The notes under the pieces are model-generated. The model had not been told where the DNA came from. It worked only from the letters and a program-made list of their open reading frames with translations, and ran no database searches. Shown piece after piece: positions 10,789-40,682 of a stretch of DNA of 64,000 bases; position 1 is the first letter of the stretch; each line of letters starts with the position of its first letter. Source of the stretch: Salisapilia sapeloensis CBS 127946 (lineage: Eukaryota; Protista; Oomycota); NCBI GenBank assembly GCA_023334545.1, contig JAADVB010000076.1, forward strand, positions 8,114-72,113. The letters run 5' to 3'. A program made the translations under genes and the position numbers.

Positions 10789-11012
10789 CTTGCGTAATGG
10801 ATCAAATGCCTTCGCTCCAGCCTGCGTCTCTTCACGATCGCATCGTTTTGATTCGTACAAAAGCACTTGCTCGACAACATGACTGGGCAAAAACAAACAA
10901 GTCAAATATCACAATATTAAACACATTATATCATCATCAATGTATACAAATAGCCATATTTTATCGGACCATTTTGACAATCTAACTTGACACGAACAAA
11001 GTAAAGTCCGTG

Positions 11013-13538
11013 ATGGACGCTCGAGCGCTGGCGACAGGCATCTCCCTCCATCCACCGACACGTCCGAGCTCTGAACCTTCATCTAATCCATTCTCTGTAC
11101 ATCCATCGCATTCCACCCAGGACGATGATGCCGGTGATGATGAAACAAGCTGGCGAAATATGCTCCAACAGCAAACGTTTATACGATTGCAACGGCAGAC
11201 GAAATCCACCGTTGAAACAGTACTAGGGAAAGCCAATCGATCTAGCTACCAGAGCATGGTAGACTACATGGTCAGTCACTGCGTTGGCAATACTGCTTAC
11301 TACGACGTCGACTGCTACCCGACTGCCGGTATCATTGCCGGCCAGGATGCACCGACCAGTAGTCTGTGGCTACCTCCACTCAGTCGCCAGCTACTCCAAC
11401 ACTTTCCACTCTTGTTACGTTGGGATTTCAACGCCAAGAACGCTCGAGTAGAGTTAGAAAACGTTCTCTTCCAGTTGCAAAGCGTAGATCGAGTTCGAGA
11501 ACGAGAAAAGTCTTGGCTACTGACTGAAATACACGCCTGCGACTTGGAAACAAATAAACCTTGGGCGTCACCACAAGCGCCCAAAAGATCAACACCACGA
11601 AAGCCTCTGAGAAAAACTCGATCAATGACTCAGCCGTGGCGTAATCCAGCACTGGCGCAAGACATGATCGACCACCTGGAGGTGGCAGCAGAGTCCAACA
11701 CGACCGATTCCACAAAAGTTACGAAGCAGATCAACACTTCTTCCACAAAACTATCTACCTCCCAGCTCATCCAAGCCATCCACTCGGAGTTTGAGGCCAA
11801 GTGCGATCCAAAGCAAGACGTCTGTGCAGAGCAAGTGGACATTCTCCTTGCAGTCGTTCGACAGCAGCTACAAGATGCGCTCAACGGGGACGAACGACAT
11901 GTCGTTGTCTACCAGCGATTCATCAACTGGTGTCTACGAAGAGTGACCAAAAGCCGATCTTTTGCCCAGCATGACGACCACGGCGTCATCCTCCCAGCCT
12001 ACTCCGAACGCCCTCTTGCCTCCTTCCTCCAGGAGCTGCTATCCAAAGGACTAGCCGACATCCGGACGTGTCCTTCCGACCAAAAGGATCCAACTCTCGA
12101 AACAAAGTGGAAAATGTCTCTGTCTAAAAACGCAGACTACTACCACTTCAACGCCAACGAAAGTCAAGTGCCCTACCTCATCCTGTGTATCGATCAATTG
12201 GAAACTCTTGACTCGAGAACACTCGCAGACTTTATGTCCATCTGGACGCAAGCGAATCGATCCAGGCGCTCCGATGAGACTCTTCGCATCGGGTTCGTCG
12301 TCGGCGTTGCGTCCCAAGCGTCCCCAGCCTTGCATCGTCTACCACTGCAAGTGACATCCAAAGTTGATCTTCAGTTCTTTCATCTCAAGGACTCGCTCAA
12401 GTGTTTCCAGGACGTCTTGGAGGCGCTCATCGTCCAGTCGTCTCTCCCTCTCCGTCTCTCGGGTGCCGTCCTGCGTTCCCTCGCAGCCGTCCAGCGTCGG
12501 TCCCAGTCTCTCGTTCGGTTCCGTCACGCCCTCTGCTTTGTCTGTTTCGACCACATTCGTTCTCATCCGTTCAGTTGCTCTACGTTACTCTTCCTACAAG
12601 ATGAAAAGTCAGAGGAAGTGCGACTACCTTTGAGAGTCAAAGTCTTTCGTCACGTCTGCAACACCTCTGACTCGGATCAAGAGGCTGCTCAAACTGTACA
12701 GAGAGCAGTGGACGCTGTACGTCGTCGACGACAGAAGTGGAATTGCGGATGGAGATGCTTGCGAGAGTGCTGTCTGTGGCTGCGCATCCCTCTTACAGAA
12801 ACGTCTCTCGTGTCCAGTTTGGCAGAGGCGCTCGACGGCAACCTCCAGTACTCGTCTGTCGTCGATGCAATGAAAGATCGAATTCATCTTGCGTCCTTCA
12901 AGGTGCTCAAGAGCTTGATGGACGGCCTGACAGGTATCTGCAACGATCATGAGGCGTCCAACGCGACTCTTCAGGAGCTCTCGTTGCTCTTTCAGTACGC
13001 CATCTTGTACGGCAAAGAAGACCCGGACTTTGCGCCCGTGGAAGGCAACTTGCGACAGGAGGCTCATGCAACGCTTTGTGAAGTGATAGGAAACTTGTGT
13101 AGCCCTAGCAGCTTTGACGAAGATGCTTCTGTAGCGACGGTTGCTCAGTTCCTAGAGCAAGAGACGACAGTAGACGACCCTTCGGTCATCGCGAGCGTCG
13201 AGCTAGACTACTACAACGAGCTGCACAATCTACTCTTGGAAATGGCCAATGATTCGACGTCGGATGACGACATCCTACAGGAAGCTCGGGCCGGAAATGT
13301 CGCCAACTCGACGTTTGGGAAGCAGCTGGGGAAAGCGTATACATACTATACGGACGCCGTGGGCAGGTATCTCGACTTGAGGGATTGGAAACGCCAGTTT
13401 GAAAGTGACATGCAAGAGCAAGATGCGTCGGCAACCTTTTTACGAGCATTGTGCACCCTCCGTCACTGGGGTTTGCTCAAGTCACTGGCGACGGAGAGCC
13501 GAGACGTGGAAAAGTTAGAGAAAATGGTCTTCATGTAA
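11013..13538 (+). CDS. ORC3: Origin recognition complex subunit 3-like
   Basis: 'LILCIDQLETLDSRTLADFMSIW...IGFVVGVAS...LPLQVTSKVDLQFF...LPLRLSGAVLR' follows the ORC3 AAA-like N-domain pattern. The C-terminal 'TFLRALCTLRHWGLLK' fits the ORC3 winged helix. Recognised by eye. Confidence 0.72.
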   Translation: MDARALATGISLHPPTRPSSEPSSNPFSVHPSHSTQDDDAGDDETSWRNMLQQQTFIRLQRQTKSTVETVLGKANRSSYQSMVDYMVSHCVGNTAYYDVDCYPTAGIIAGQDAPTSSLWLPPLSRQLLQHFPLLLRWDFNAKNARVELENVLFQLQSVDRVREREKSWLLTEIHACDLETNKPWASPQAPKRSTPRKPLRKTRSMTQPWRNPALAQDMIDHLEVAAESNTTDSTKVTKQINTSSTKLSTSQLIQAIHSEFEAKCDPKQDVCAEQVDILLAVVRQQLQDALNGDERHVVVYQRFINWCLRRVTKSRSFAQHDDHGVILPAYSERPLASFLQELLSKGLADIRTCPSDQKDPTLETKWKMSLSKNADYYHFNANESQVPYLILCIDQLETLDSRTLADFMSIWTQANRSRRSDETLRIGFVVGVASQASPALHRLPLQVTSKVDLQFFHLKDSLKCFQDVLEALIVQSSLPLRLSGAVLRSLAAVQRRSQSLVRFRHALCFVCFDHIRSHPFSCSTLLFLQDEKSEEVRLPLRVKVFRHVCNTSDSDQEAAQTVQRAVDAVRRRRQKWNCGWRCLRECCLWLRIPLTETSLVSSLAEALDGNLQYSSVVDAMKDRIHLASFKVLKSLMDGLTGICNDHEASNATLQELSLLFQYAILYGKEDPDFAPVEGNLRQEAHATLCEVIGNLCSPSSFDEDASVATVAQFLEQETTVDDPSVIASVELDYYNELHNLLLEMANDSTSDDDILQEARAGNVANSTFGKQLGKAYTYYTDAVGRYLDLRDWKRQFESDMQEQDASATFLRALCTLRHWGLLKSLATESRDVEKLEKMVFM

Positions 13539-15687: not shown

Positions 15688-16722
15688 ATGTTCGCCAAGA
15701 AGATGCTCCAGCGCACGGCCATGGCCGCCAAGCCACACATGCGATCCATGCACATTGCCAATGACATGACTCAGCTCATTGGCAACACGCCTCTCGTCTA
15801 CCTCAACAAGGTCACCGAGGGTCTCAACGCCAAGGTCGCCGTCAAGTGCGAGTTCATGGAACCCTGCGCCAGCGTCAAGGACCGTATCGGTATGAGCATG
15901 ATCAAGGCTGCTGAAGAGAGCGGTCAGATCAACAAGGACACGCTCCTCGTCGAACCCACGAGCGGAAACACCGGTATCGGTCTTGCCTTTGCCGCTGCTG
16001 TCCGAGGATACAAGCTCACGCTCGTTATGCCCGACACGATGAGTATGGAGCGCCGTATCATCCTCAAGTCCTTTGGCTGCGACGTCATTCTCACGCCAGG
16101 TGCTCGTGGCATGACCGGAGCCGTCATGAAGGCCGAGGAAATCGTCCGCAACCACCCCAACTCGCTTTCTCTCGCCCAGTTTGAGAATGAGGCTAACCCC
16201 AAGATCCACTACGAAACCACGGGTCCGGAAATCTGGAAGGACACGGACGGCACGGTCGACTACTTTGTCAGCGGCGTCGGCACCGGCGGCACCATCACCG
16301 GTACCGCTCGTTACCTCAAGCCGCTCAAGCCGGAGATGAAGGTCGTCGCCGTCGAGCCGGAGGAGAGCCCCGTGCTGTCCGGTGGCAACCCTGCGCCGCA
16401 CAAGATCCAGGGCATTGGTGCTGGCTTTGTCCCGAGCATCCTCGACCGTGATCTGATCGACGAGATCTTGACGCCGAACTCGGCCCAATCGTTCGCCATG
16501 GCCAAGCGTCTTGCTCTCGAGGAAGGTCTTCTCGTCGGCCCGTCGTCCGGTGCAGCCGTGGTTGCCAGTCTGGAGCTCGCCAAGAGGAAGGAGGCTGAAG
16601 GAAAGCTGATTGTGGCCATTCTGCCGTCCTTCGGTGAGCGATACTTGAGCTCTCCGCTCTTTGAGCAGGAGCGCGAGGCCGCTGCCAACTTGCCGACGTC
16701 GGAACTCCCGGAGAAGAACTAA
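15688..16722 (+). CDS. cysK: Cysteine synthase (O-acetylserine sulfhydrylase) with probable mitochondrial presequence
   Basis: '[10 protein letters not shown]', the PLP-lysine motif '[10 protein letters not shown]', '[12 protein letters not shown]', '[10 protein letters not shown]', '[10 protein letters not shown]' and 'PSFGERYLS'. Confidence 0.97.
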
Positions 16723-18803
16723 GCGCTGTTATGATGTCGTGTAACGTTGCTGTCTTATAAAAGCACTATATCAATGACAAGAGAAAGTTAGAGAAACGAG
16801 GTACTTTGGTATGTCTGATGCGTGCTGGTTGATCGCCCTGTAGGAGGCTGGTCGTGCTGTTAAAACGTGGTGTATGTGTCACCATCTCTTGATGTGCTCT
16901 ACTTCTAGCTGCTCGTCAGTGTCTTTGTCCATTGTCACAGAAACTATTTTTGCAAGTCACCTGGTCGCATCTACTCTGTAGACATTGACTGTATCTCTCG
17001 TATGGTTTGTTGATCCAACGGATACCGTTATATACAAAAGGTAAGCACTTTGGCGTTTTTGTATTTTTGCCTCTAGACAGGTTAAGGAGTTATTCAGCGC
17101 ACTTAAGCGATCAAGTCCTACCACGACGGTGTTTCCTGTATGGTTCAAGTATGCAGGGGTAGAAAGTTAAACATTTAAAAAGCTTTTGGATCGAGTAGGC
17201 GCCATGCTGTCATACGTTCGCAGTAGATACACCATATATAAAAACATACACGCAAAAGTGTATACAATAGAGAGTCTACCGATATAGCACGTACGAGATA
17301 CATTCGGACGTACGTATCCACTCGACCTTGTCCTCTTCCTTCAGCCTACACTTCAAATTGAAGTAGTGATGGAATGGATCTTGCCCCGACTACTCCAGCT
17401 TCAACCTACACTTTATGTCGATTGTGGGAGCAATATGCTAGAGGAACGTCTGTCCTTGATGTGGCGGGTACAAGGGGTCGCGAGGATTTGCGAGTTCTCA
17501 TCCGCTTTTACAATGCAAAAATTTGAAGGGCATGCAAAAGACAATACTGTATGCTTTATGGACAGCAATAACTTTGAAAAGTCTGGTGATTGTGCCGAGT
17601 CTCGCTCTTTGGTCACACCAGCCTCTACTGGGAAAGGAATTGGCACAACGGCAAGATGGTACGCGAAGAGATGCTCTTCCCAAGTTGCACAATACCGCCA
17701 AAGGTGTACGTGCGAACAACTCTCGAGCTTCTTACAATTCGTGCACACTATTTCTGATAATGCGTCGATGATCTGCCGAGGTGCACGTACGACGAAGGCC
17801 CTCTAAAGTTGTAATGAGTGGCTTTGTAAGAGCATCATTAAACAGCTCACTGTTGGTTGCATTCCCATCGCACAAAGACAAGGCCGTGAATAGTGTCAAT
17901 GATCAGCTCACCAACGTATCGTCATGTTTGTTTTGTTGTTGAATTTGCAACTGCGATCAAATACGGCGAAAGTTGTGTTGGAGGGAAACGTTTTAGCGCG
18001 ACACCCATTGTACGATCCTCGTCTTCAAATCATAATCAGTTTTCTAGAGTGTGGTACTGGAGATTGCTAATGAACACGCGGAAAGCATCTTTTCCCGGTG
18101 CTGCTACCTCGCTTTGCTGAGATTCCTCTTGAACAGACGAACTTGCACACGTGTGATGAAGGTGTTGAATCTTGGTGGAGGATCTGCTGCGCGTGGTTGA
18201 AGTAATCTCTTCTTCCGGACCTCTTGTTACTCCATCTAGCACATAAAAGAATAAACAGATTATAATAGTAAGAACATAAATCTATCTTGATCAACAACCG
18301 TTGGTGCCTAAATGTAGAAAGTAGATGTCAAGGTGCATTTCATGTTGCCATGCCAGATTCGTAAGCGTGCACAGCTCTACAGCTTTTGTTTCGTGTTTTT
18401 AGAGTATCATCCGCTAAGTAGATCCTATCGTGGCTAATGTGAAACATGTAAGGTAGACTCATTGCATTGCTAGTTTTAATAGGAGTCCAGCTTGCAATTC
18501 TACTTTCGCTTGGTTAACACACCTGAGAACGAGAAGCCATTGGTGACTTTATATACCCTCACTCCATTACTACTGCCAGGCAATCCCTTTCGCTAGAACG
18601 CTGCCAAGTAATAGTTCTCGCCATCCTTCAAAATAAATGTTTCATGTACCTTCCCCTGCACTTGCCAGACAACGAGCGTAAACTCCAAGACAAACAATGC
18701 GGAAGAGCTTTTTAATTGCAATCTCGTGACCGAATACATTTCTGTCTAAAACGTGATTTCATACGCGTCATGGTCCACGTACCACTTTCTACTCCGCCCA
18801 GTC

Positions 18804-20679
18804 CTATGTTTTAATCGACTCCCAAGGCTTTTGCGGGCGCTCCTCCCGACTCTTTTGCAGCAGATCCGACGAATCATCCGATAGTCGGTCTTCAATGTCC
18901 TTGATCCCAGGCACCTTTTCCCCGTTCTCAATCTTCTTCATAAGCTCCGAAAACGACTGAGGGTACTTTGGTTCGTCCTTTTCCTCCAGCTCTTCCTTCT
19001 CCTTCGGCTCCACAGACGTACTCTGCTGGTTGAGTCTCTCCATGAACTTGGTCAGACTGTCCGTTTCGTCTGCCTTCGCCTTCTCTTCCAACGGACTCTC
19101 CTCTGGTTTCAAGACCGACTCTTCCTCTGTTTTCGTGGGCAAAGCGGGCGTCCGGAGCGACTGGAAGTGGTTTCGAGCCACTTGTTCCATGGGCGTATCG
19201 TCATTCGAAGAGAGAGACTGGAGGCTCTTAAGAAGAGCTTGGAGGATGGACAAGTGGGCGTCCAGATCCTCCTTCGAGTGCCACGTCCATTCGAGGTTTC
19301 CATTCCGATTCTCAAACCCTATCGATCGAAGCACTTCTTCGTGATGCTACAGACTCTTGTCAGAAGTATAAAGATAGATGATAATGTAAAAAGACGTACG
19401 TGGAGTGGTTGGATCTTTTGCTTGTAGTTCACGTTCCCAGTCGCGATGCGGCGATACCGAGGAACGTCCGGATGCTACATACAAAGTGTTATGACAAGTC
19501 CGGCAATACAGCCTATGGATGCTTACCTCGGTGAGGTTCCGGACGTACATGGAGAGGATACTGGCAGCCTGCTTAACGTCCTCCAACGAGTTCTATCGTC
19601 ACCCCACGCTTTATCACAGCTATAATCCCTACTTTAACCAAAGTTTAAGCGTACCTCTGTTCTGAATCGCTTGAGAGCGTCTTCCATCTTGTCCATCTTT
19701 TGCTCCACTCCTACGACCTTGGGCGCCTCCACCTTTTCCTTTACATCCACAGCTTCATCCTCCACCTTTTCAACCTTTGTATCCTGTTTCTCCACTGCAG
19801 TCTTCTGTGGGGACGGAGCAGGAACAGAAGACTCTTCCAACACCTTTTGGAGAGCTGATACTTGTGCTTGAAGAGTTGCAATCTCCTTGGCATTGGACTA
19901 CATACGACATGAGTACCATACAAAAATACAGCGAAACAGTAGTCCTACTTGCTCCGACAGCTTCGTGTCCAACAGCGTCTGGGTCGTCAGCTGCTGCTCG
20001 GACGAATGGAGCGACTTGGAGAGAGCAGAGAGCTCCTGCGTTTGCTCCTGAATGGCAGTAGACACGCCCGTGATGGCTGTCATCAACTGCTCGTCCTCTG
20101 CCTTCATCTTCTCCTCTTCCTCCTTCACTTTTTCGTCTTCCAAACCGTACCGTGGAGACAGCCAGGGAATCCACCCATTCTCCCTCGCATAGTTCCACAC
20201 CATATTCACGACCGTCGCTGCTCCGACGATCGATGCAACAGTCGTTAGGAACTGGATGTACGGAGGCGTGTATCGCTTCGGGACTAGCTGGAAGCCAGCA
20301 GGGATGGCACCCATGCCAACTGCAGTAGCAGGTGTGGTCGCTGGCGGAGACGAGTACTGGACAGTCGCCGAGGATGGAGACGTGGAAGAAGAGGCATTCT
20401 GGTATCGCTCCAGCGCTTCCTGCACCTCTTCTTTCGTCAGACCCTTTTGCTCTAGGAACTGGATACGTTCGCTAATTGGCGTCGACTAGCATGAGCACAA
20501 GAAGGGTATTAGTCGAATGCTCACAGGAGACCAAAGCGATCTCTAGCAAGTAGAAAACAAGTCTCTTGTAGAAATAACAAGACATCCTCTTCATATCATA
20601 TCACTGAAGCTACGACAAGTACCTGGACGTTCGGGTGCTGTAGGAATTGGACCCCATTTGCCACTTGGTCCTCCCTCAT
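18804..20679 (-). CDS. PEX14: PEX14 with C-terminal PUB and KPWE (PEX39-like) domains; 6 exons, about 506 aa
   Basis: Exons 20679-20623, 20485-19949, 19897-19655, 19592-19527, 19474-19400 and 19346-18804; all five introns are GT-AG and phase 0. The product has Pex14_N 'NGVQFLQHPNVQSTPISERIQFLEQKGLTKEEV', a hydrophobic segment, a coiled coil, a PUB-like 'SILSMYVRNLTEHPDVPRYRRIATGN...LRSIGF', and 'YPQSFSELMKKIENGEKVPGIKDI...QKPWE'. Confidence 0.85.
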
Positions 20680-20830
20680 GCTATGGCCGATTCTTGTTTA
20701 TTAAGCGTCATGCCAGCAGTTCCGTCCTCTTCTCCTGTAATTCGTAGAAACTGATATGCATCCTCCGCTGATTGGTTGAAATGGGCTACTGGAGCACACA
20801 GCCTATAACTCCGCTCGGACTTTGACAAGC

Positions 20831-21834
20831 ATGGCGAAGCGACCGCATGAGGATAGAGAGGAGAAGGAGGATGGAGAAGAGTCTAAAGACTCGCAGGTCA
20901 TGCGGAATCCATCTCACATCCGCAACAAACAGAAGCGGCAACAGATGATGCAAAAGTACAAGAAGCAGAAGAAGCTATTGAAAAAGCAGAACAGGGAGGC
21001 AGTCGCCAATGGACAGCGAGAGAAGCAGACGCCGCAGACGCTGGACTCGAAGCGAGAGGCAGAGGTCAGCATCGTCGATACCTCTGGCGCAGATGACGAG
21101 GTCGCGAACGACGAGGTGGAGGACGAATTCGCCGACATCTTTGGCAATGAGACTGCCCCGAAGCTCATGATCACGACGCGGCCTCGACCGTCCGGCGACC
21201 TGTACTACTTTATCCAGGACCTCATGAACCTCCTCCCGAACGCCTTCTACTACAAGCGAGGCGCGAACGACATCAAGGACATTGTCCAGTGGGCCACCAA
21301 CAAGGAGTTCACGCACCTCGTCGTGCTGTCGGAAAAAGCCAAGAAGTGCAATGGGTACGTCTACTACTCCCCACTGTCCATTCTACACTAATTATTACAT
21401 ATAGCATGGTCGTGAGTCGACTTCCGGACGGTCCGACTGCCTTCTTCAAGGTGTCGAACGTGAAACTTTGCAAAGAGATCTCGAACCACGCTCGACAGAC
21501 AGCGCACCAGCCAGAGCTCATTCTGAACAACTTTTCCACTCGACTCGGCCATCGAGTCGGTCGGTTCCTAGGTAGCTTATTCCCTCACGACCCAGAGTTT
21601 GAGGGTCGACAGGTCGTTACGTTCCACAACCAGCGAGACTTTATCTTTGTCCGACACCATCGGTACATCTTTGAGAACGAAGGAACGAAAGCTCGACTGC
21701 AGGAGATCGGGCCGAGGTTCACGGTCAAGATGCGGTGGCTGCAGGAAGGAACGTTCGACACAAAGTTCGGGGAGTACGAGTGGGTCCACAAGCAGCACCA
21801 GGTGGACACGACTCGAAGACGCTTCCACTTGTAG
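20831..21834 (+). CDS. RPF1: Brix-domain 60S biogenesis factor RPF1 (2 exons; intron 21355-21404)
   Basis: '[10 protein letters not shown]', '[12 protein letters not shown]', '[13 protein letters not shown]', '[18 protein letters not shown]' and '[21 protein letters not shown]'. Confidence 0.92.
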
Positions 21835-21913: not shown

Positions 21914-23284
21914 ATGAGTGCCGTGGAGGCTGTTCGGCAAGCCCTGTCGTCGATAGATCATCCGTTCTCGGACCACGAGATACGAAGAGTGCTACGAAGC
22001 AGGAGAGACGATGTCGCCAAAACAGTCCTCTTCCTCAAGGACAAGTACAACTTTCTATCGTCCAACTACTATCTGGACATCAGCATCGCCCATCCGGTCA
22101 TTCGAAAAGAACTACTGAAGGGGTATGCGCATCTGCCAGATGACTGTGTCACGCATGAAGGTTCTCCCGTACTACTCGTCCAACCAGAGCACTTTCACTA
22201 TCGAGATGCAAAGGAAAGCGTTCAACTACCAAATGCGAGTGTCCAAGAGAGTACTGGATCGGATGCCAAGTTACTATCTATCTATCTATGGGAACTAGCG
22301 TTGGACATGGCCGAAGTGGATCTGGATAGAGAACAAGACAAGTCGATCTTTGTCCAGCCTCTGGCCCAAGTGACACTACTGGTGGATGTGCAGCACATGC
22401 AGCTGGAACTACATGTTGGGTACATTCAGTTCCTCCACGAGCTCTTCACTACTTTTCAGCAGTACTACCCGGAGAGTCTTCGCCAAGTGCTCGTCATCGG
22501 AGGCAATGACAAGGCCCAGTCGGTCATAAAGTGGATGCAGAAGGTCGTCCAGGCATCCTTCTTATACAAGGTCCAGGTCCTGAACTACCAGAGTGAGCTC
22601 GTGAACTTTATCCCTCACGGCAGCATTCCACAAATGTACGGAGGCAAATGCTCACTTCAGTCGCCTCCGGAGTGGATTCGGGATCAAGCAGACGCAGAAA
22701 ACGTGTCTCTGCAGGTAGAGGACGGAGAGGAAATCTCGGAGGAAAAGAAAGTGCTGAATGGAATGCAATACGCATCTAAAGCTGTTGGAGAGGTGCTTCA
22801 GCTGCCGAACACACTAGCTCGAGGAAAAGTATCCAAGCAAAAGGGTGAGGACAGTTGGACTGGGTACTATGGCGTCCTGAGACCGGAAGCGTTACTGCTG
22901 TATGTGGACGAAAGTGGTCATCGCCCAGAGGTCATTCTGCCCATCAAGGAAGGTACGACGGTCTCGACGGTCCAGGTGCGTACGTTGTTCCGTTTCAACC
23001 AACTATTCGGCTTCCACATGTCGGTCGAGACGAGTCCGACTGGAGTGGTGCTGGCCTGTCGGTCGGAAGTGGAGCGGTCCAAGTGGATGGCGGAGATCCA
23101 GGACGCGTGTATCAGATGCGAGGGAAGACGACGGGACGAGGGTAGGAGGCTGAAAGAGCGGGAGGCCAAACAAGAAGCGTTCAAGGACTATGACATGATG
23201 ACCTTTGGAGACGAGTCGGCCAAATCGGAAGGGAAGGCTCGGCACTCACATCCTGTTGATCACATGGTAGATGCTTTCAATTGA
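21914..23284 (+). CDS. CRAL-TRIO (Sec14-like) plus PH domain protein
   Basis: 'VTLLVDVQHM...FQQYYPESLRQVLVI...FIPHGSIPQMYGG' is CRAL-TRIO-like. 'GKVSKQKGEDSWTGYYGVLRPEALLLY...VLACRSEVERSKWMAEIQ' is PH-like. Confidence 0.8.
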   Translation: MSAVEAVRQALSSIDHPFSDHEIRRVLRSRRDDVAKTVLFLKDKYNFLSSNYYLDISIAHPVIRKELLKGYAHLPDDCVTHEGSPVLLVQPEHFHYRDAKESVQLPNASVQESTGSDAKLLSIYLWELALDMAEVDLDREQDKSIFVQPLAQVTLLVDVQHMQLELHVGYIQFLHELFTTFQQYYPESLRQVLVIGGNDKAQSVIKWMQKVVQASFLYKVQVLNYQSELVNFIPHGSIPQMYGGKCSLQSPPEWIRDQADAENVSLQVEDGEEISEEKKVLNGMQYASKAVGEVLQLPNTLARGKVSKQKGEDSWTGYYGVLRPEALLLYVDESGHRPEVILPIKEGTTVSTVQVRTLFRFNQLFGFHMSVETSPTGVVLACRSEVERSKWMAEIQDACIRCEGRRRDEGRRLKEREAKQEAFKDYDMMTFGDESAKSEGKARHSHPVDHMVDAFN

Positions 23285-39026: not shown

Positions 39027-40682
39027 TTACTCATTCATCCGATGGGCATGCAGCCATGACACCAAATCCCATTTCGATCGTATAGAAATCCAGTCAAGGT
39101 CATCTAGGCGGAACATTTCCGTGCCTCTTCCTCGGAGGATATAGTCCACCAGCTCAATATGTCCATTCGACGCCGCTTGAATCACACCACGAATCGAACA
39201 AGTTCCCTTACTAGCAAGAGACCGATGCTCTAGCCACTGGAGGACTCTCAAATGCCCATTCCACGCAGCTTCATCCATCGCCAGAGTGCTGCATTCTTCT
39301 CCATTCTGATAGAGCCATTCGACAACGGGCATGTGGCCTCCACAAGCCGCCGCCGCCATCGCCTCCTCGGACGTATATCCTTCCCGACGATGTGCACGGA
39401 GGAACTCGATCACATCCAAGTGGCCATTGCTGATGGCACCATCCATAGCCAACTTCGAGCAACCTTCAGTTCGATAATAGTGCAAGTATTGGACGACATC
39501 CAAATGACCATTCCGAGCGCTGTCATCAAGAGCACGAATGGATCCTCCTTCATGTCTGTTTTCAGCCAGCCAGCGCACCATACTAAAATGTCCGGCAGCA
39601 GCACTACCATCGAATGCATCGATCGTCGCCCCAGCAGCAGTATTGGCATGTAGCCACTTGACAGTCTCCAAGTGGTTGTTCCGAGATGCCCAATCCATCG
39701 CATGCGTCGTACAACCTTCCGACCGGTTTGCATGCATCCACTTTACGATCGATAGTCGACCGCATTCTGCCGCCCAGTCTATCGCTCTGTGAGAACAAGG
39801 AGCGTTCATCGCTTCATGGAGCCAGATGACTACATCCAAATGGTTGTTTCGACAAGCCCAGTCCATAGCAGCAGGAGTGCACTCGACCAAAGGGTAGTGC
39901 AGAGAAAGCCATTTGAGAACGCCTAGATGTCCGTTGCAAGCTGCTCTATCCAGAGCTGAGCTAGTGACACCACCGCCGCGATGTCTATACAGCCACCGTA
40001 ACAAGCCCAAGTTTCCACAAGATGCAGCACCGTCCATCGCCATGGTGGACGACGGAATGTCGCGTACATGCGTGTGCAGCCAAAAGACAACTACCAACTG
40101 ACCACCACAAGCTGCTCGGTCCAGTGTCCGAGGTGTACAGGGAGAAAGATCGTTGGACAAAAGCCACTGGACACACTTGATATGCCCTTTTTCAGCGACA
40201 ATGTCGATTGCATCCGACCTACATCTCTCTGTTCTATTTTGCAACAACCACTCTGCGGTTTCAAGATGGCCGTTGGATAGGGCCCAATCCATGGCAAAGG
40301 CTGCTGCTCCTGGAGGTACATGCGGATGTAGCCATGTGACAATGTCCAAGTGTCCTCTTTCAGCTGCACGCTCGAGGAGTTCACCTGGGAGCTCCCAGTT
40401 CGGGTGCAAAGTCTGAAGCCATTGCAGAATAGATAGCTGACCTAAAGATGCTGCTTGCTTGATGGCATTGTGCCAATCTCGATACGAGACGTACAAATTT
40501 GGATAGCACTGAAGTCGAGCTAGTAAATGACTTCGCTGATTGCGTACTGCATCGGAAATACTCAAAAGGTAGGAATGGTCGAGGAAGTCTTCGAGGAGAT
40601 CCACCAATTGACCACTACCGACGATTGCATCATGCGGGCGGATTACCACTTCGACAGATCGCAGAGCGACCTCCCTTGCCAT
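39027..40682 (-). CDS. Ankyrin-repeat protein of the oomycete-expanded family
   Basis: About a dozen 'AMDWA(A)xNGHLxVVxWLHxxRxEGCT'-type repeats in a single-exon 551-aa ORF. Confidence 0.92.
   Translation of the reverse strand: MAREVALRSVEVVIRPHDAIVGSGQLVDLLEDFLDHSYLLSISDAVRNQRSHLLARLQCYPNLYVSYRDWHNAIKQAASLGQLSILQWLQTLHPNWELPGELLERAAERGHLDIVTWLHPHVPPGAAAFAMDWALSNGHLETAEWLLQNRTERCRSDAIDIVAEKGHIKCVQWLLSNDLSPCTPRTLDRAACGGQLVVVFWLHTHVRDIPSSTMAMDGAASCGNLGLLRWLYRHRGGGVTSSALDRAACNGHLGVLKWLSLHYPLVECTPAAMDWACRNNHLDVVIWLHEAMNAPCSHRAIDWAAECGRLSIVKWMHANRSEGCTTHAMDWASRNNHLETVKWLHANTAAGATIDAFDGSAAAGHFSMVRWLAENRHEGGSIRALDDSARNGHLDVVQYLHYYRTEGCSKLAMDGAISNGHLDVIEFLRAHRREGYTSEEAMAAAACGGHMPVVEWLYQNGEECSTLAMDEAAWNGHLRVLQWLEHRSLASKGTCSIRGVIQAASNGHIELVDYILRGRGTEMFRLDDLDWISIRSKWDLVSWLHAHRMNE

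What the first reader, a model, noticed from the sequence alone, without database searches (positions are those of the whole stretch)
18804..20679. PEX14 is a three-in-one protein: Pex14_N docking domain, PUB domain and PEX39-like KPWE domain
Seen: five separate ORF-track fragments join through five phase-0 GT-AG introns (137, 51, 62, 52, 53 nt) into one protein of about 506 aa. After Pex14_N, TM and coiled coil comes 'SILSMYVRNLTEHPDVPRYRRIATGNVNY...EVLRSIGF', the N-x4-P-x3-K/R-Y-R-x-I pattern of PUB domains. The C-terminus is 'YPQSFSELMKKIENGEKVPGIKDI...RPQKPWE'. Established: Pex14_N binds PEX5 WxxxF motifs; PUB domains bind the p97/Cdc48 C-terminus; the FxxxxxxIxxGxxxPGI...KPWE module is the hallmark of PEX39 (human C6orf226, yeast Yjr012c), whose (R/K)PWE motif binds PEX7. 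Inference: one membrane protein could dock the PTS1 receptor, capture the PTS2 receptor and recruit p97 for extraction or quality control, a wiring unlike the yeast or animal docking complex. Caveat: the Pfam/InterPro KPWE family is labelled PEX14-like, so the architecture may already exist in automated oomycete annotations without being studied.
Basis: partly seen in the sequence, partly recalled or inferred. Interest (0 to 1): 0.8.

Follow-up and report, generated by a model that had tools for sequence, protein, structure and literature searches.

The report
Oomycete PEX14 with PUB and KPWE
This is a real, expressed six-exon gene for the peroxisomal docking protein PEX14 that also carries a p97/Cdc48-type PUB domain and a PEX39-like PEX7-binding tail, but the same three-part layout is already in public databases for dozens of oomycetes and brown algae, and each extra part has already been noted in print for PEX14 of other lineages.

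Summary
Six exons on the minus strand (20679-18804) join through five phase-0 GT-AG introns of 137, 51, 62, 52 and 53 nt into a 506-aa protein. Single RNA contigs from four runs cross all five junctions exactly.

The protein has these parts:
- Pex14_N
- one TM helix
- a coiled coil
- a PUB domain (aa 269-374)
- a conserved amphipathic helix (aa 422-433)
- a KPWE domain (aa 454-502)

- About 45 database proteins from oomycetes carry PF04695+PF09409+PF17733. These include Phytophthora, Pythium, Globisporangium, Peronospora, Saprolegnia and Aphanomyces. Albugo and the brown alga Ectocarpus have the same layout.
- A 2017 paper reports a PUB domain in Toxoplasma and Chromera Pex14 (PMC5737649).

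No functional study of the PUB domain turned up. Binding of PEX7 by the KPWE module and of Cdc48 by the PUB domain are inferences. PEX1/PEX6 are an alternative PUB partner.

The scan noted this same stretch once before (s1-296399).

Verdict: an ordinary orthologue with a known, unstudied architecture. Interest is modest.

The parts
18804..20679 (-). PEX14 gene: six coding exons (20679-20623, 20485-19949, 19897-19655, 19592-19527, 19474-19400, 19346-18804 including the stop). The protein is 506 aa. The transcript runs from at least 20719 to 18708.
   Evidence: Gene model. Spliced RNA contigs from 4 runs cross all five junctions.
20399..20679 (-). Pex14_N domain, aa 1-48, split by intron 1 (20622-20486). 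It has two FL motifs, at aa 11-15 and aa 28-32.
   Evidence: Pfam PF04695 on exon 2: E 3.7e-8. Alignment with orthologues that score 39-58 bits.
20195..20263 (-). Single hydrophobic transmembrane segment, aa 94-116.
   Evidence: Highest Kyte-Doolittle window in the protein. Aligned with a helix at 105-132 in the AF2 model of the Pythium orthologue.
19817..20146 (-). Coiled-coil region, about aa 133-225, spanning intron 2. An acidic, variable linker follows it up to aa 268.
   Evidence: Heptad scan. The orthologue model has a single long helix at 150-239. Nonsynonymous differences from organism B cluster at aa 223-257.
19203..19687 (-). PUB domain, aa 269-374, encoded on exons 3-6 and interrupted by introns 3, 4 and 5. 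Signature residues are N298, L299, P306, R307, Y308, R309, N315, K319, G336, F337, E345 and L361.
   Evidence: Exon 5 alone against PF09409: E 0.0049. 136 bits against the orthologue PUB profile, with all invariant residues kept. The profile hits PDB PUB domains. The fold is confirmed on an orthologue. Listed differences from organism B in aa 341-371 are all synonymous.
19026..19061 (-). Conserved short amphipathic helix, aa 422-433, with motif [DN]-[LF]-x-x-F-[LMI]-x-[RK]-L. It is a candidate equivalent of the PEX39 helix that contacts PEX7-PTS2.
   Evidence: Conserved across oomycete and unnamed protist orthologues inside an otherwise variable linker. Predicted helical in the orthologue model at 455-466, with pLDDT about 60. 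The role is inferred from PMC13591263 and PMC12339391.
18819..18965 (-). KPWE domain (PEX39-like, formerly DUF5572), aa 454-502, ending in the KPWE motif at aa 499-502 (18830-18819).
   Evidence: Pfam PF17733: 55.7 bits against a cutoff of 27. The Atlas's nearest clusters are KPWE_dom proteins. All nine listed differences from organism B are synonymous.

Best explanation
This gene is the oomycete orthologue of PEX14, the membrane protein of the peroxisomal receptor-docking and translocation complex.

Shown here:
- It is one spliced mRNA encoding 506 aa.
- The parts, in order, are Pex14_N, a Ser/Thr/Pro-rich linker, one TM helix, a coiled coil, a variable acidic linker, a PUB domain, a second variable linker with a conserved amphipathic helix, and a C-terminal KPWE domain.
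- The same layout, with the same two intron positions inside the PUB domain in a Globisporangium-like relative, occurs across oomycetes, in brown algae and in marine protist metagenomes.

Inferred from established knowledge of these families:
- The N-terminal domain binds the WxxxF/Y motifs of PEX5.
- The whole C-terminal half faces the cytosol, following the published PEX14 topology.
- The helix plus KPWE module does the job of the soluble peroxin PEX39 of animals and fungi. It would bind PEX7 at the membrane and help take it out of the PEX13 phase and reload it, as proposed for plant PEX14.
- The PUB domain binds the C-terminal Leu-Tyr tail of Cdc48/p97. This would station that ATPase at the import site for extraction and turnover of stalled receptors or peroxins. 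Other lineages achieve this with separate adaptors or cofactors: PUX10 in plants, FAF2 in mammals and Ufd1-Npl4 in yeast.
For: - Gene model and splicing.
- Domains in the window: Pex14_N 3.7e-8, KPWE_dom 5e-15, PUB exon 5 at 0.005; PUB region 136 bits, all 12 invariant residues kept.
- Orthologues with all three Pfam domains at or above cutoff. Taxa are identified.
- PUB fold and sequence link to solved p97-binding PUB domains.
- Purifying selection on the PUB and KPWE modules but not on the linkers.
- Orthologue with the same intron positions in the PUB domain and a conserved helix.
- Literature: PEX39 fused to PEX14 outside opisthokonts (PMC12339391). Plant PEX14 has a helix plus KPWD and a cytosolic C-terminus (PMC13591263; PMC12173945). 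Oomycetes have PEX7 and PTS2 cargo (PMC7710942). PUB binds the p97 tail (PMC5389986). Cdc48 acts at peroxisomes.
Against: - No binding was tested.
- PEX7, PEX13, PEX5 and Cdc48 of this particular genome could not be looked at.
- The spliced window protein itself could not be given to Pfam or AlphaFold. A joined sequence has no reference, so the PUB call rests on exon 5, on orthologues and on a local profile.
- PUB domains can bind partners other than p97. HOIP PUB binds OTULIN and SPATA2 (titles of the PDB entries).
- Moog et al. 2017 proposed PEX1/PEX6 rather than Cdc48 as the partner of the Pex14 PUB domain.
Confidence: 0.85

Rival explanations
1. The PUB domain does not recruit Cdc48/p97. 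Instead it recruits the peroxisomal AAA ATPases PEX1/PEX6, or another protein carrying a PUB-interacting motif such as a deubiquitinase. This would tie the receptor-export motor directly to the docking protein.
For: Moog et al. 2017 proposed this for the PUB domain of Toxoplasma and Chromera Pex14 (PMC5737649). PUB domains of HOIP bind OTULIN and SPATA2 motifs as well as p97 (entry titles).
Against: The PUB domains with solved complexes bind the p97 tail or short PIM peptides. No PUB-PEX1/6 complex turned up in the papers searched. The closest solved relatives by sequence, UBXD1 and PNGase, are p97 binders. Cdc48 is now known to act on peroxisomal proteins.
Confidence: 0.25
2. The PUB domain is a structural relic or spacer with no partner. 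Only the Pex14_N and KPWE parts are functional.
For: No functional data exist for any PEX14 PUB domain. One marine homologue (P0020) scores below the Pfam PUB cutoff.
Against: Twelve residues are invariant from oomycetes to brown algae, including the N...PRYR...N signature shared with PNGase and UBXD1. Only synonymous differences from organism B were listed in the part of the domain covered (aa 341-371), while the flanking linkers drift.
Confidence: 0.07
3. Two products are made: a short PEX14 ending at the stop in retained intron 3 (19634), and a separate PUB-KPWE protein.
For: Assembled contigs drop rare isoforms, so a minor intron-retaining form cannot be excluded.
Against: One contig per run spans all six exons at uniform depth in four runs. 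Orthologues are annotated as single proteins in many genomes. P0020, from marine metagenomes, is an intronless single ORF with all three domains.
Confidence: 0.03

Closest known systems
PEX14 of other oomycetes in public databases (for example Phytophthora nicotianae 'Peroxin-14' P0039, P. infestans 'PUB domain-containing protein' P0045, Pythium oligandrum P0003, Saprolegnia parasitica P0081, Albugo laibachii P0009)
   Same: Same order of Pex14_N, TM, coiled coil, PUB, helix and KPWE_dom. Pfam PF04695+PF09409+PF17733 are precomputed for them. The head-to-head Brix-gene neighbour and the PUB intron positions are shared with L001.
   Different: Only 31-42% identical over the full length. The window protein is shorter in both linkers and sits on its own unresolved long branch inside oomycetes.
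Plant PEX14 (Arabidopsis) with a PEX39-like region
   Same: Pex14_N, TM, coiled coil and a cytosolic tail with an amphipathic helix and a KPW[DE] motif. It is proposed to take over PEX39's role with PEX7 (PMC13591263). Atlas plant clusters carry Pex14_N plus KPWE_dom.
   Different: The plant protein has no PUB domain. It carries PF23020 (PEX14-like_2nd), which was not detected here.
Pex14 of Toxoplasma gondii and Chromera velia (Moog et al. 2017)
   Same: PEX14 with a PUB domain in the C-terminal part, in the SAR supergroup (PMC5737649).
   Different: Whether those proteins also end in a KPWE domain was not checked here. The sequences were not compared.
PEX39 (human C6orf226, yeast Yjr012c)
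   Same: KPWE_dom/DUF5572 ending in (R/K)PWE, preceded by a helix. The motif binds PEX7 (PMC12339391). Atlas feature search of exon 6 gives PEX39-type clusters at 0.87-0.91.
   Different: PEX39 is a small soluble protein. Here the module is the tail of a membrane protein, and the fungal HTH_76 part is not detected.
PUB domains of UBXD1/UBXN6, PNGase and HOIP
   Same: Same fold (TM 0.73-0.83 to PNGase PUB). Shared N...P..(K/R)YR.I...N...GF signature.
   Different: About 20% identity. The host proteins are soluble p97 cofactors, not peroxins.
Separate Cdc48/p97 adaptors and cofactors acting at peroxisomes (Arabidopsis PUX10, mammalian FAF2/UBXD8, yeast Ufd1-Npl4)
   Same: They bring Cdc48/p97 to peroxisomal membrane proteins or to stalled PEX5.
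   Different: These are separate UBX or Ufd1-Npl4 proteins. Here the binding module would be built into PEX14 itself and would bind the C-terminal tail.

Membership tests
PEX14 | N-terminal Pex14_N domain (PF04695) with the conserved FL motifs | tested here: met
   Exon 2 alone scores 33.3 bits against a cutoff of 23.2. The full N-terminus aligns with orthologues scoring up to 58 bits. FL motifs lie at aa 11-15 and aa 28-32.
PEX14 | Single membrane segment followed by a coiled coil | tested here: met
   Hydropathy peak at aa 94-116 and heptad pattern at aa 133-225. Matching helices appear in the orthologue model.
PEX14 | Binds PEX5 and localises to the peroxisomal membrane | not testable with these tools
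   Requires experiments.
PUB domain (PF09409) | Profile match above the curated cutoff | tested here: inconclusive
   The window protein could only be scanned in pieces. Exon 5 scores 17.2 bits against a cutoff of 34.3. Eight of the ten PUB-bearing homologues scanned score 38-63 bits. Window aa 269-374 scores 136 bits against their profile.
PUB domain (PF09409) | PUB fold | tested here: met
   Tested on the orthologue P0002:222-330. Its PUB core (aa 296-348 of the window protein) is about 72% identical to the window by my count on the alignment. pLDDT is 90.7. The top 30 PDB hits are almost all PUB domains, with TM 0.73-0.83 to PNGase.
PUB domain (PF09409) | Conserved signature residues N...P..(K/R)YR.I...N...GF, which I recall as lining the tail-binding surface of PNGase | tested here: met
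   N298, P306, R307, Y308, R309, N315, G336 and F337 are present and align to the same positions in PNGase and UBXD1. Which residues contact p97 is recalled from memory and was not checked here.
PUB domain (PF09409) | Binds the C-terminal tail of p97/Cdc48 | not testable with these tools
   No multimer prediction or binding assay was available. The Cdc48 of this genome was not seen.
PEX39-like module (KPWE_dom, PF17733) | KPWE_dom profile match ending in the (R/K)PWE motif | tested here: met
   55.7 bits against a cutoff of 27, at aa 454-502. KPWE lies at aa 499-502.
PEX39-like module (KPWE_dom, PF17733) | Upstream amphipathic helix that contacts PEX7-PTS2 | tested here: inconclusive
   A conserved helix motif at aa 422-433 is shared by orthologues and is helical in the orthologue model at modest confidence. 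Equivalence to the PEX39 helix was not tested.
PEX39-like module (KPWE_dom, PF17733) | Binds PEX7, and a PTS2 pathway is present in the organism | not testable with these tools
   Only the 64-kb window is readable. Other oomycetes have PEX7 and PTS2 thiolase (PMC7710942).

The most novel reading that the evidence does not exclude
The PUB domain sits just upstream of the PEX39-like module on one cytosolic tail. In stramenopiles, and perhaps all SAR lineages, this could couple an AAA ATPase directly to PEX7 hand-off. The ATPase would be Cdc48, or PEX1/PEX6. Recycling or clearance of the PTS2 receptor from the PEX13 pore would then be ATP-driven at the docking protein itself. In animals and yeast, by contrast, PEX7 is proposed to leave by passive KPWE hand-off.
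Probability: 0.1. Interest if true: 0.7.

Novelty: new member of a known kind. Interest (0 to 1): 0.3.

Why it matters
The finding confirms an exact, transcript-backed gene model for PEX14 in a poorly sampled oomycete lineage. It also shows that the Pex14_N-PUB-KPWE layout is conserved from oomycetes to brown algae, under purifying selection on both add-on modules.

Work from 2024 to 2026 places Cdc48 at peroxisomes through separate adaptors or cofactors. A PEX14 with a built-in PUB domain is therefore a natural system for asking how Cdc48, or PEX1/6, is brought to the import site, and whether this is linked to PEX7 recycling.

The architecture itself is not a discovery. It is visible in UniProt and NCBI annotations, and both add-ons have been mentioned in print.

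Tried and rejected
- Piecewise phmmer of exon 6 and exon 5 against PDB sequences gave only chance hits or nothing.
- The search for homologous proteins with exon 6 found a single protein, because of the length filter. It was still useful as a route to the syntenic locus L001.
- A region-restricted search with the PUB part of P0015 found only itself.
- The spliced 506-aa protein has no reference, so I did not type it in. It could not be given to Pfam, AlphaFold, the listing of cluster members or the look-up of encoding contigs. I used orthologue ids and a local HMM instead.
- The window's own protein, or a relative above 50% identity, was not among the library hits.
- I checked the long ORFs of the window for a Cdc48 or another peroxin and found none.
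- A first Pfam call on neighbouring genes failed because of a wrong coordinate.
- The idea that PEX14 plus PUB is unreported was rejected after a whole-word literature search found Moog et al. 2017.
- The single-gene tree could not place the organism.

Full report
**Observation**

The gene lies on the minus strand. Reading the reverse complement and joining the fragments gives six exons: 20679-20623, 20485-19949, 19897-19655, 19592-19527, 19474-19400 and 19346-18804.
- Every exon length is a multiple of three, so all five introns are phase 0.
- The introns are 137, 51, 62, 52 and 53 nt. All begin GT and end AG, and their G+C is 0.32-0.42.
- The CDS is 1521 nt and encodes 506 aa.
- The ATG at 20679 is preceded by two in-frame stops.

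Public RNA runs hold the locus. When they were laid on 18500-21000, three runs of organism A (100% identical) and one run of organism B (about 96% identical) each gave a single contig that skips exactly the five proposed introns. The contigs cover about 18708 to about 20719. Depth is zero in intron 1 and in the downstream flank.

The alternative of a short PEX14 plus a separate PUB-KPWE mRNA is not supported. Assembled contigs cannot exclude rare isoforms.

**Domains in the window protein**

Tools here accept only unbroken references, so I scanned the exons separately.
- Exon 2 matches Pex14_N: 33.3 bits against a cutoff of 23.2. This is the C-terminal half of the profile, because intron 1 splits the domain.
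- Exon 6 matches KPWE_dom PF17733: 55.7 bits against a cutoff of 27, at protein aa 454-502.
- The 25-aa exon 5 alone gives a sub-threshold PUB match: E 0.0049, profile positions 21-44.

A hydropathy peak at aa 94-116 and heptad periodicity at aa 133-225 give the TM segment and the coiled coil.

**Relatives**

A length-limited search with exon 6 found one protein, P0001. Its 26-kb genomic contig L001 has a Pex14_N ORF upstream and a divergent Brix-domain gene, the same arrangement as in the window.

Splicing L001 by eye and by script gives a 591-aa protein that is 45% identical to the window protein.
- The two introns inside the PUB domain are at the same positions.
- The exon-3/exon-4 boundary before the PUB core is also shared.
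- L001 has one extra 69-nt intron.

An exhaustive HMMER search of the 50%-identity representative library with exon 6 returned 35 proteins. Ten of those I scanned carry a PUB match. Eight of the ten exceed the PUB cutoff, with scores of 38-63 bits. Seven of the full-length hits carry all three domains at or above the cutoffs.

A profile search with nine full-length members listed 65 proteins. About 45 of them have PF04695, PF09409 and PF17733 precomputed. They are named after Phytophthora (many species), Pythium, Globisporangium, Peronospora, Hyaloperonospora, Plasmopara, Nothophytophthora, Thraustotheca, Saprolegnia and Aphanomyces. Some are literally called 'PUB domain-containing protein' or 'PUB domain'.

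Cluster look-ups identify:
- P0009 as Albugo laibachii;
- P0022 as Ectocarpus sp. and P0034 as Discosporangium, both brown algae.

P0020 is an intronless ORF in marine (TARA) metagenomes.

AlphaFold DB cluster representatives named PEX14 also contain a PUB-fold segment: A0A4D9CSF4, A0A7S2GIB7 and A0A3Q8UBI1. Their organisms were not shown.

Plant and green-algal PEX14 clusters carry Pex14_N plus KPWE_dom but no PUB. Arthropod clusters carry Pex14_N only.

The window protein is only 31-42% identical to any of these. In a single-gene tree it sits inside the oomycetes on its own unresolved long branch.

**Is the middle domain really PUB?**
- An alignment of ten orthologous PUB regions (A2) used as a profile hits solved PUB domains. 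UBXD1 scores 3.6e-11, PNGase 3e-9 to 1e-8 and HOIP 3e-4. The N...P..(K/R)YR.I...N...GF signature aligns.
- An AF2 model of the Thraustotheca region has pLDDT 90.7.
- Foldseek against the PDB returns almost only PUB domains among the top 30 hits, with TM 0.73-0.83 to PNGase PUB.
- The window's aa 269-374 score 136 bits against the A2 profile and keep all 12 invariant residues: N298, L299, P306, R307, Y308, R309, N315, K319, G336, F337, E345 and L361.

I therefore regard the PUB domain as established by transitivity. The direct Pfam test on the joined window protein could not be run.

**Selection**

I examined 40 listed differences between the window and organism B.
- All nine in the KPWE domain are synonymous.
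- All 19 nonsynonymous changes fall in the two linkers, at aa 223-257 and aa 385-416.
- One in-frame 6-nt insertion lies in the acidic linker.

Eleven further differences were not listed by the tool.

Within the second linker, a short motif at aa 422-433 ([DN]-[LF]-x-x-F-[LMI]-x-[RK]-L) is conserved in most oomycete orthologues and in some unnamed protist homologues. It is predicted helical in the full-length model of the Pythium orthologue. That model also shows Pex14_N, the TM helix, one long coiled-coil helix, a confident PUB domain and KPWE-domain helices, separated by disordered linkers.

**What is known**
[quoted passage not shown] It also shows that the (R/K)PWE motif binds PEX7 (PMC12339391).
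- Skowyra et al. use the plant fusion as support for PEX39 acting at the membrane (PMC12173945).
- A 2026 review describes the helix plus KPWD in the cytosolic tail of Arabidopsis PEX14 (PMC13591263).
- 'PEX14' with 'PUB domain' as a phrase gave no paper. A whole-word search then found Moog et al. 2017. They report a PUB domain in T. gondii and C. velia Pex14 and suggest it may bind PEX1/PEX6 (PMC5737649).
- No paper mentions it for stramenopiles, and none tests it.
- Oomycetes have PEX7 and PTS2 thiolase (PMC7710942).
- PUB domains bind the Leu804/Tyr805 tail of p97 (PMC5389986).
- Cdc48/p97 has recently been placed at peroxisomes. In yeast it extracts polyubiquitinated Pex5 (preprint 10.1101/2024.10.14.618194). 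In Arabidopsis it acts on PEX22 and works with PUX10. In mammals it works with FAF2.

**Mechanism**

Shown: one protein with three recognisable interaction modules, conserved and under selection.

Inferred:
- Pex14_N binds PEX5.
- The C-terminal half is cytosolic.
- The helix plus KPWE module binds PEX7 and substitutes for soluble PEX39.
- The PUB domain recruits Cdc48, for which I give roughly 55-60%. PEX1/6 or another motif-bearing partner I put at roughly 25%.

**Verdict**

The finding is real and well read. The gene is an ordinary orthologue of a database-visible architecture, and both add-ons have been noted in print.

What remains open is the function of the PUB domain in PEX14 and whether it cooperates with the adjacent PEX39-like module. 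The scan's index lists the same stretch once more (s1-296399) with the same reading.

Noticed in passing
window 20826-21391 (+), and L001 1019-1965 (-): PEX14 is head-to-head with a gene that starts about 150 nt away (ATG at 20831). Separate RNA contigs start at 20826-20836. In the Globisporangium-like contig L001, the same position is held by a Brix-domain gene, so the divergent pair is conserved. The first exon of the window gene gave no Pfam hit at 1e-5.
   Followed up: partly
window 18993: Organism B's transcript has an in-frame 6-nt insertion in the acidic linker between the PUB and KPWE domains. The linkers also carry all the listed nonsynonymous differences.
   Followed up: partly
P0006 (Phytophthora nicotianae, 604 aa) and P0016 (Pythium insidiosum, 510 aa): These database models look mis-annotated. 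P0006 has a 21-aa insertion inside the PUB domain exactly where the window and L001 have an intron, so it is probably a retained intron. P0016 diverges after the conserved helix and lacks the KPWE domain, which probably reflects a frameshift or a wrong last exon.
   Followed up: no
L001 2984-3052: The relative has an extra 69-nt phase-0 intron just after the TM segment. It is absent from the window gene. L001 introns are longer (69-133 nt) than the window's four short ones (51-62 nt).
   Followed up: partly
window 18500-18667: RNA contig depth is zero immediately downstream of the PEX14 3' end (about 18708). Only this 170-nt part was looked at.
   Followed up: no
window 11010-13535, 15688-16719, 21914-23281, 39030-40682, 58920-61283: Neighbouring long ORFs have the following Pfam hits: ORC3_N; a PALP (cysteine-synthase-type) enzyme; CRAL_TRIO plus PH; an ankyrin-repeat protein; Peptidase_M28 plus a transferrin-receptor-like dimerisation domain. 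None is a peroxin or Cdc48.
   Followed up: no
AlphaFold DB hit K0TGA7 (403 aa, 'PUB domain-containing protein', PUB fold at 223-321): This is a close structural match to the PEX14 PUB model. It might be a PEX14-like protein from a lineage without the PTS2 pathway. The sequence could not be fetched, so its identity and organism are unknown.
   Followed up: no
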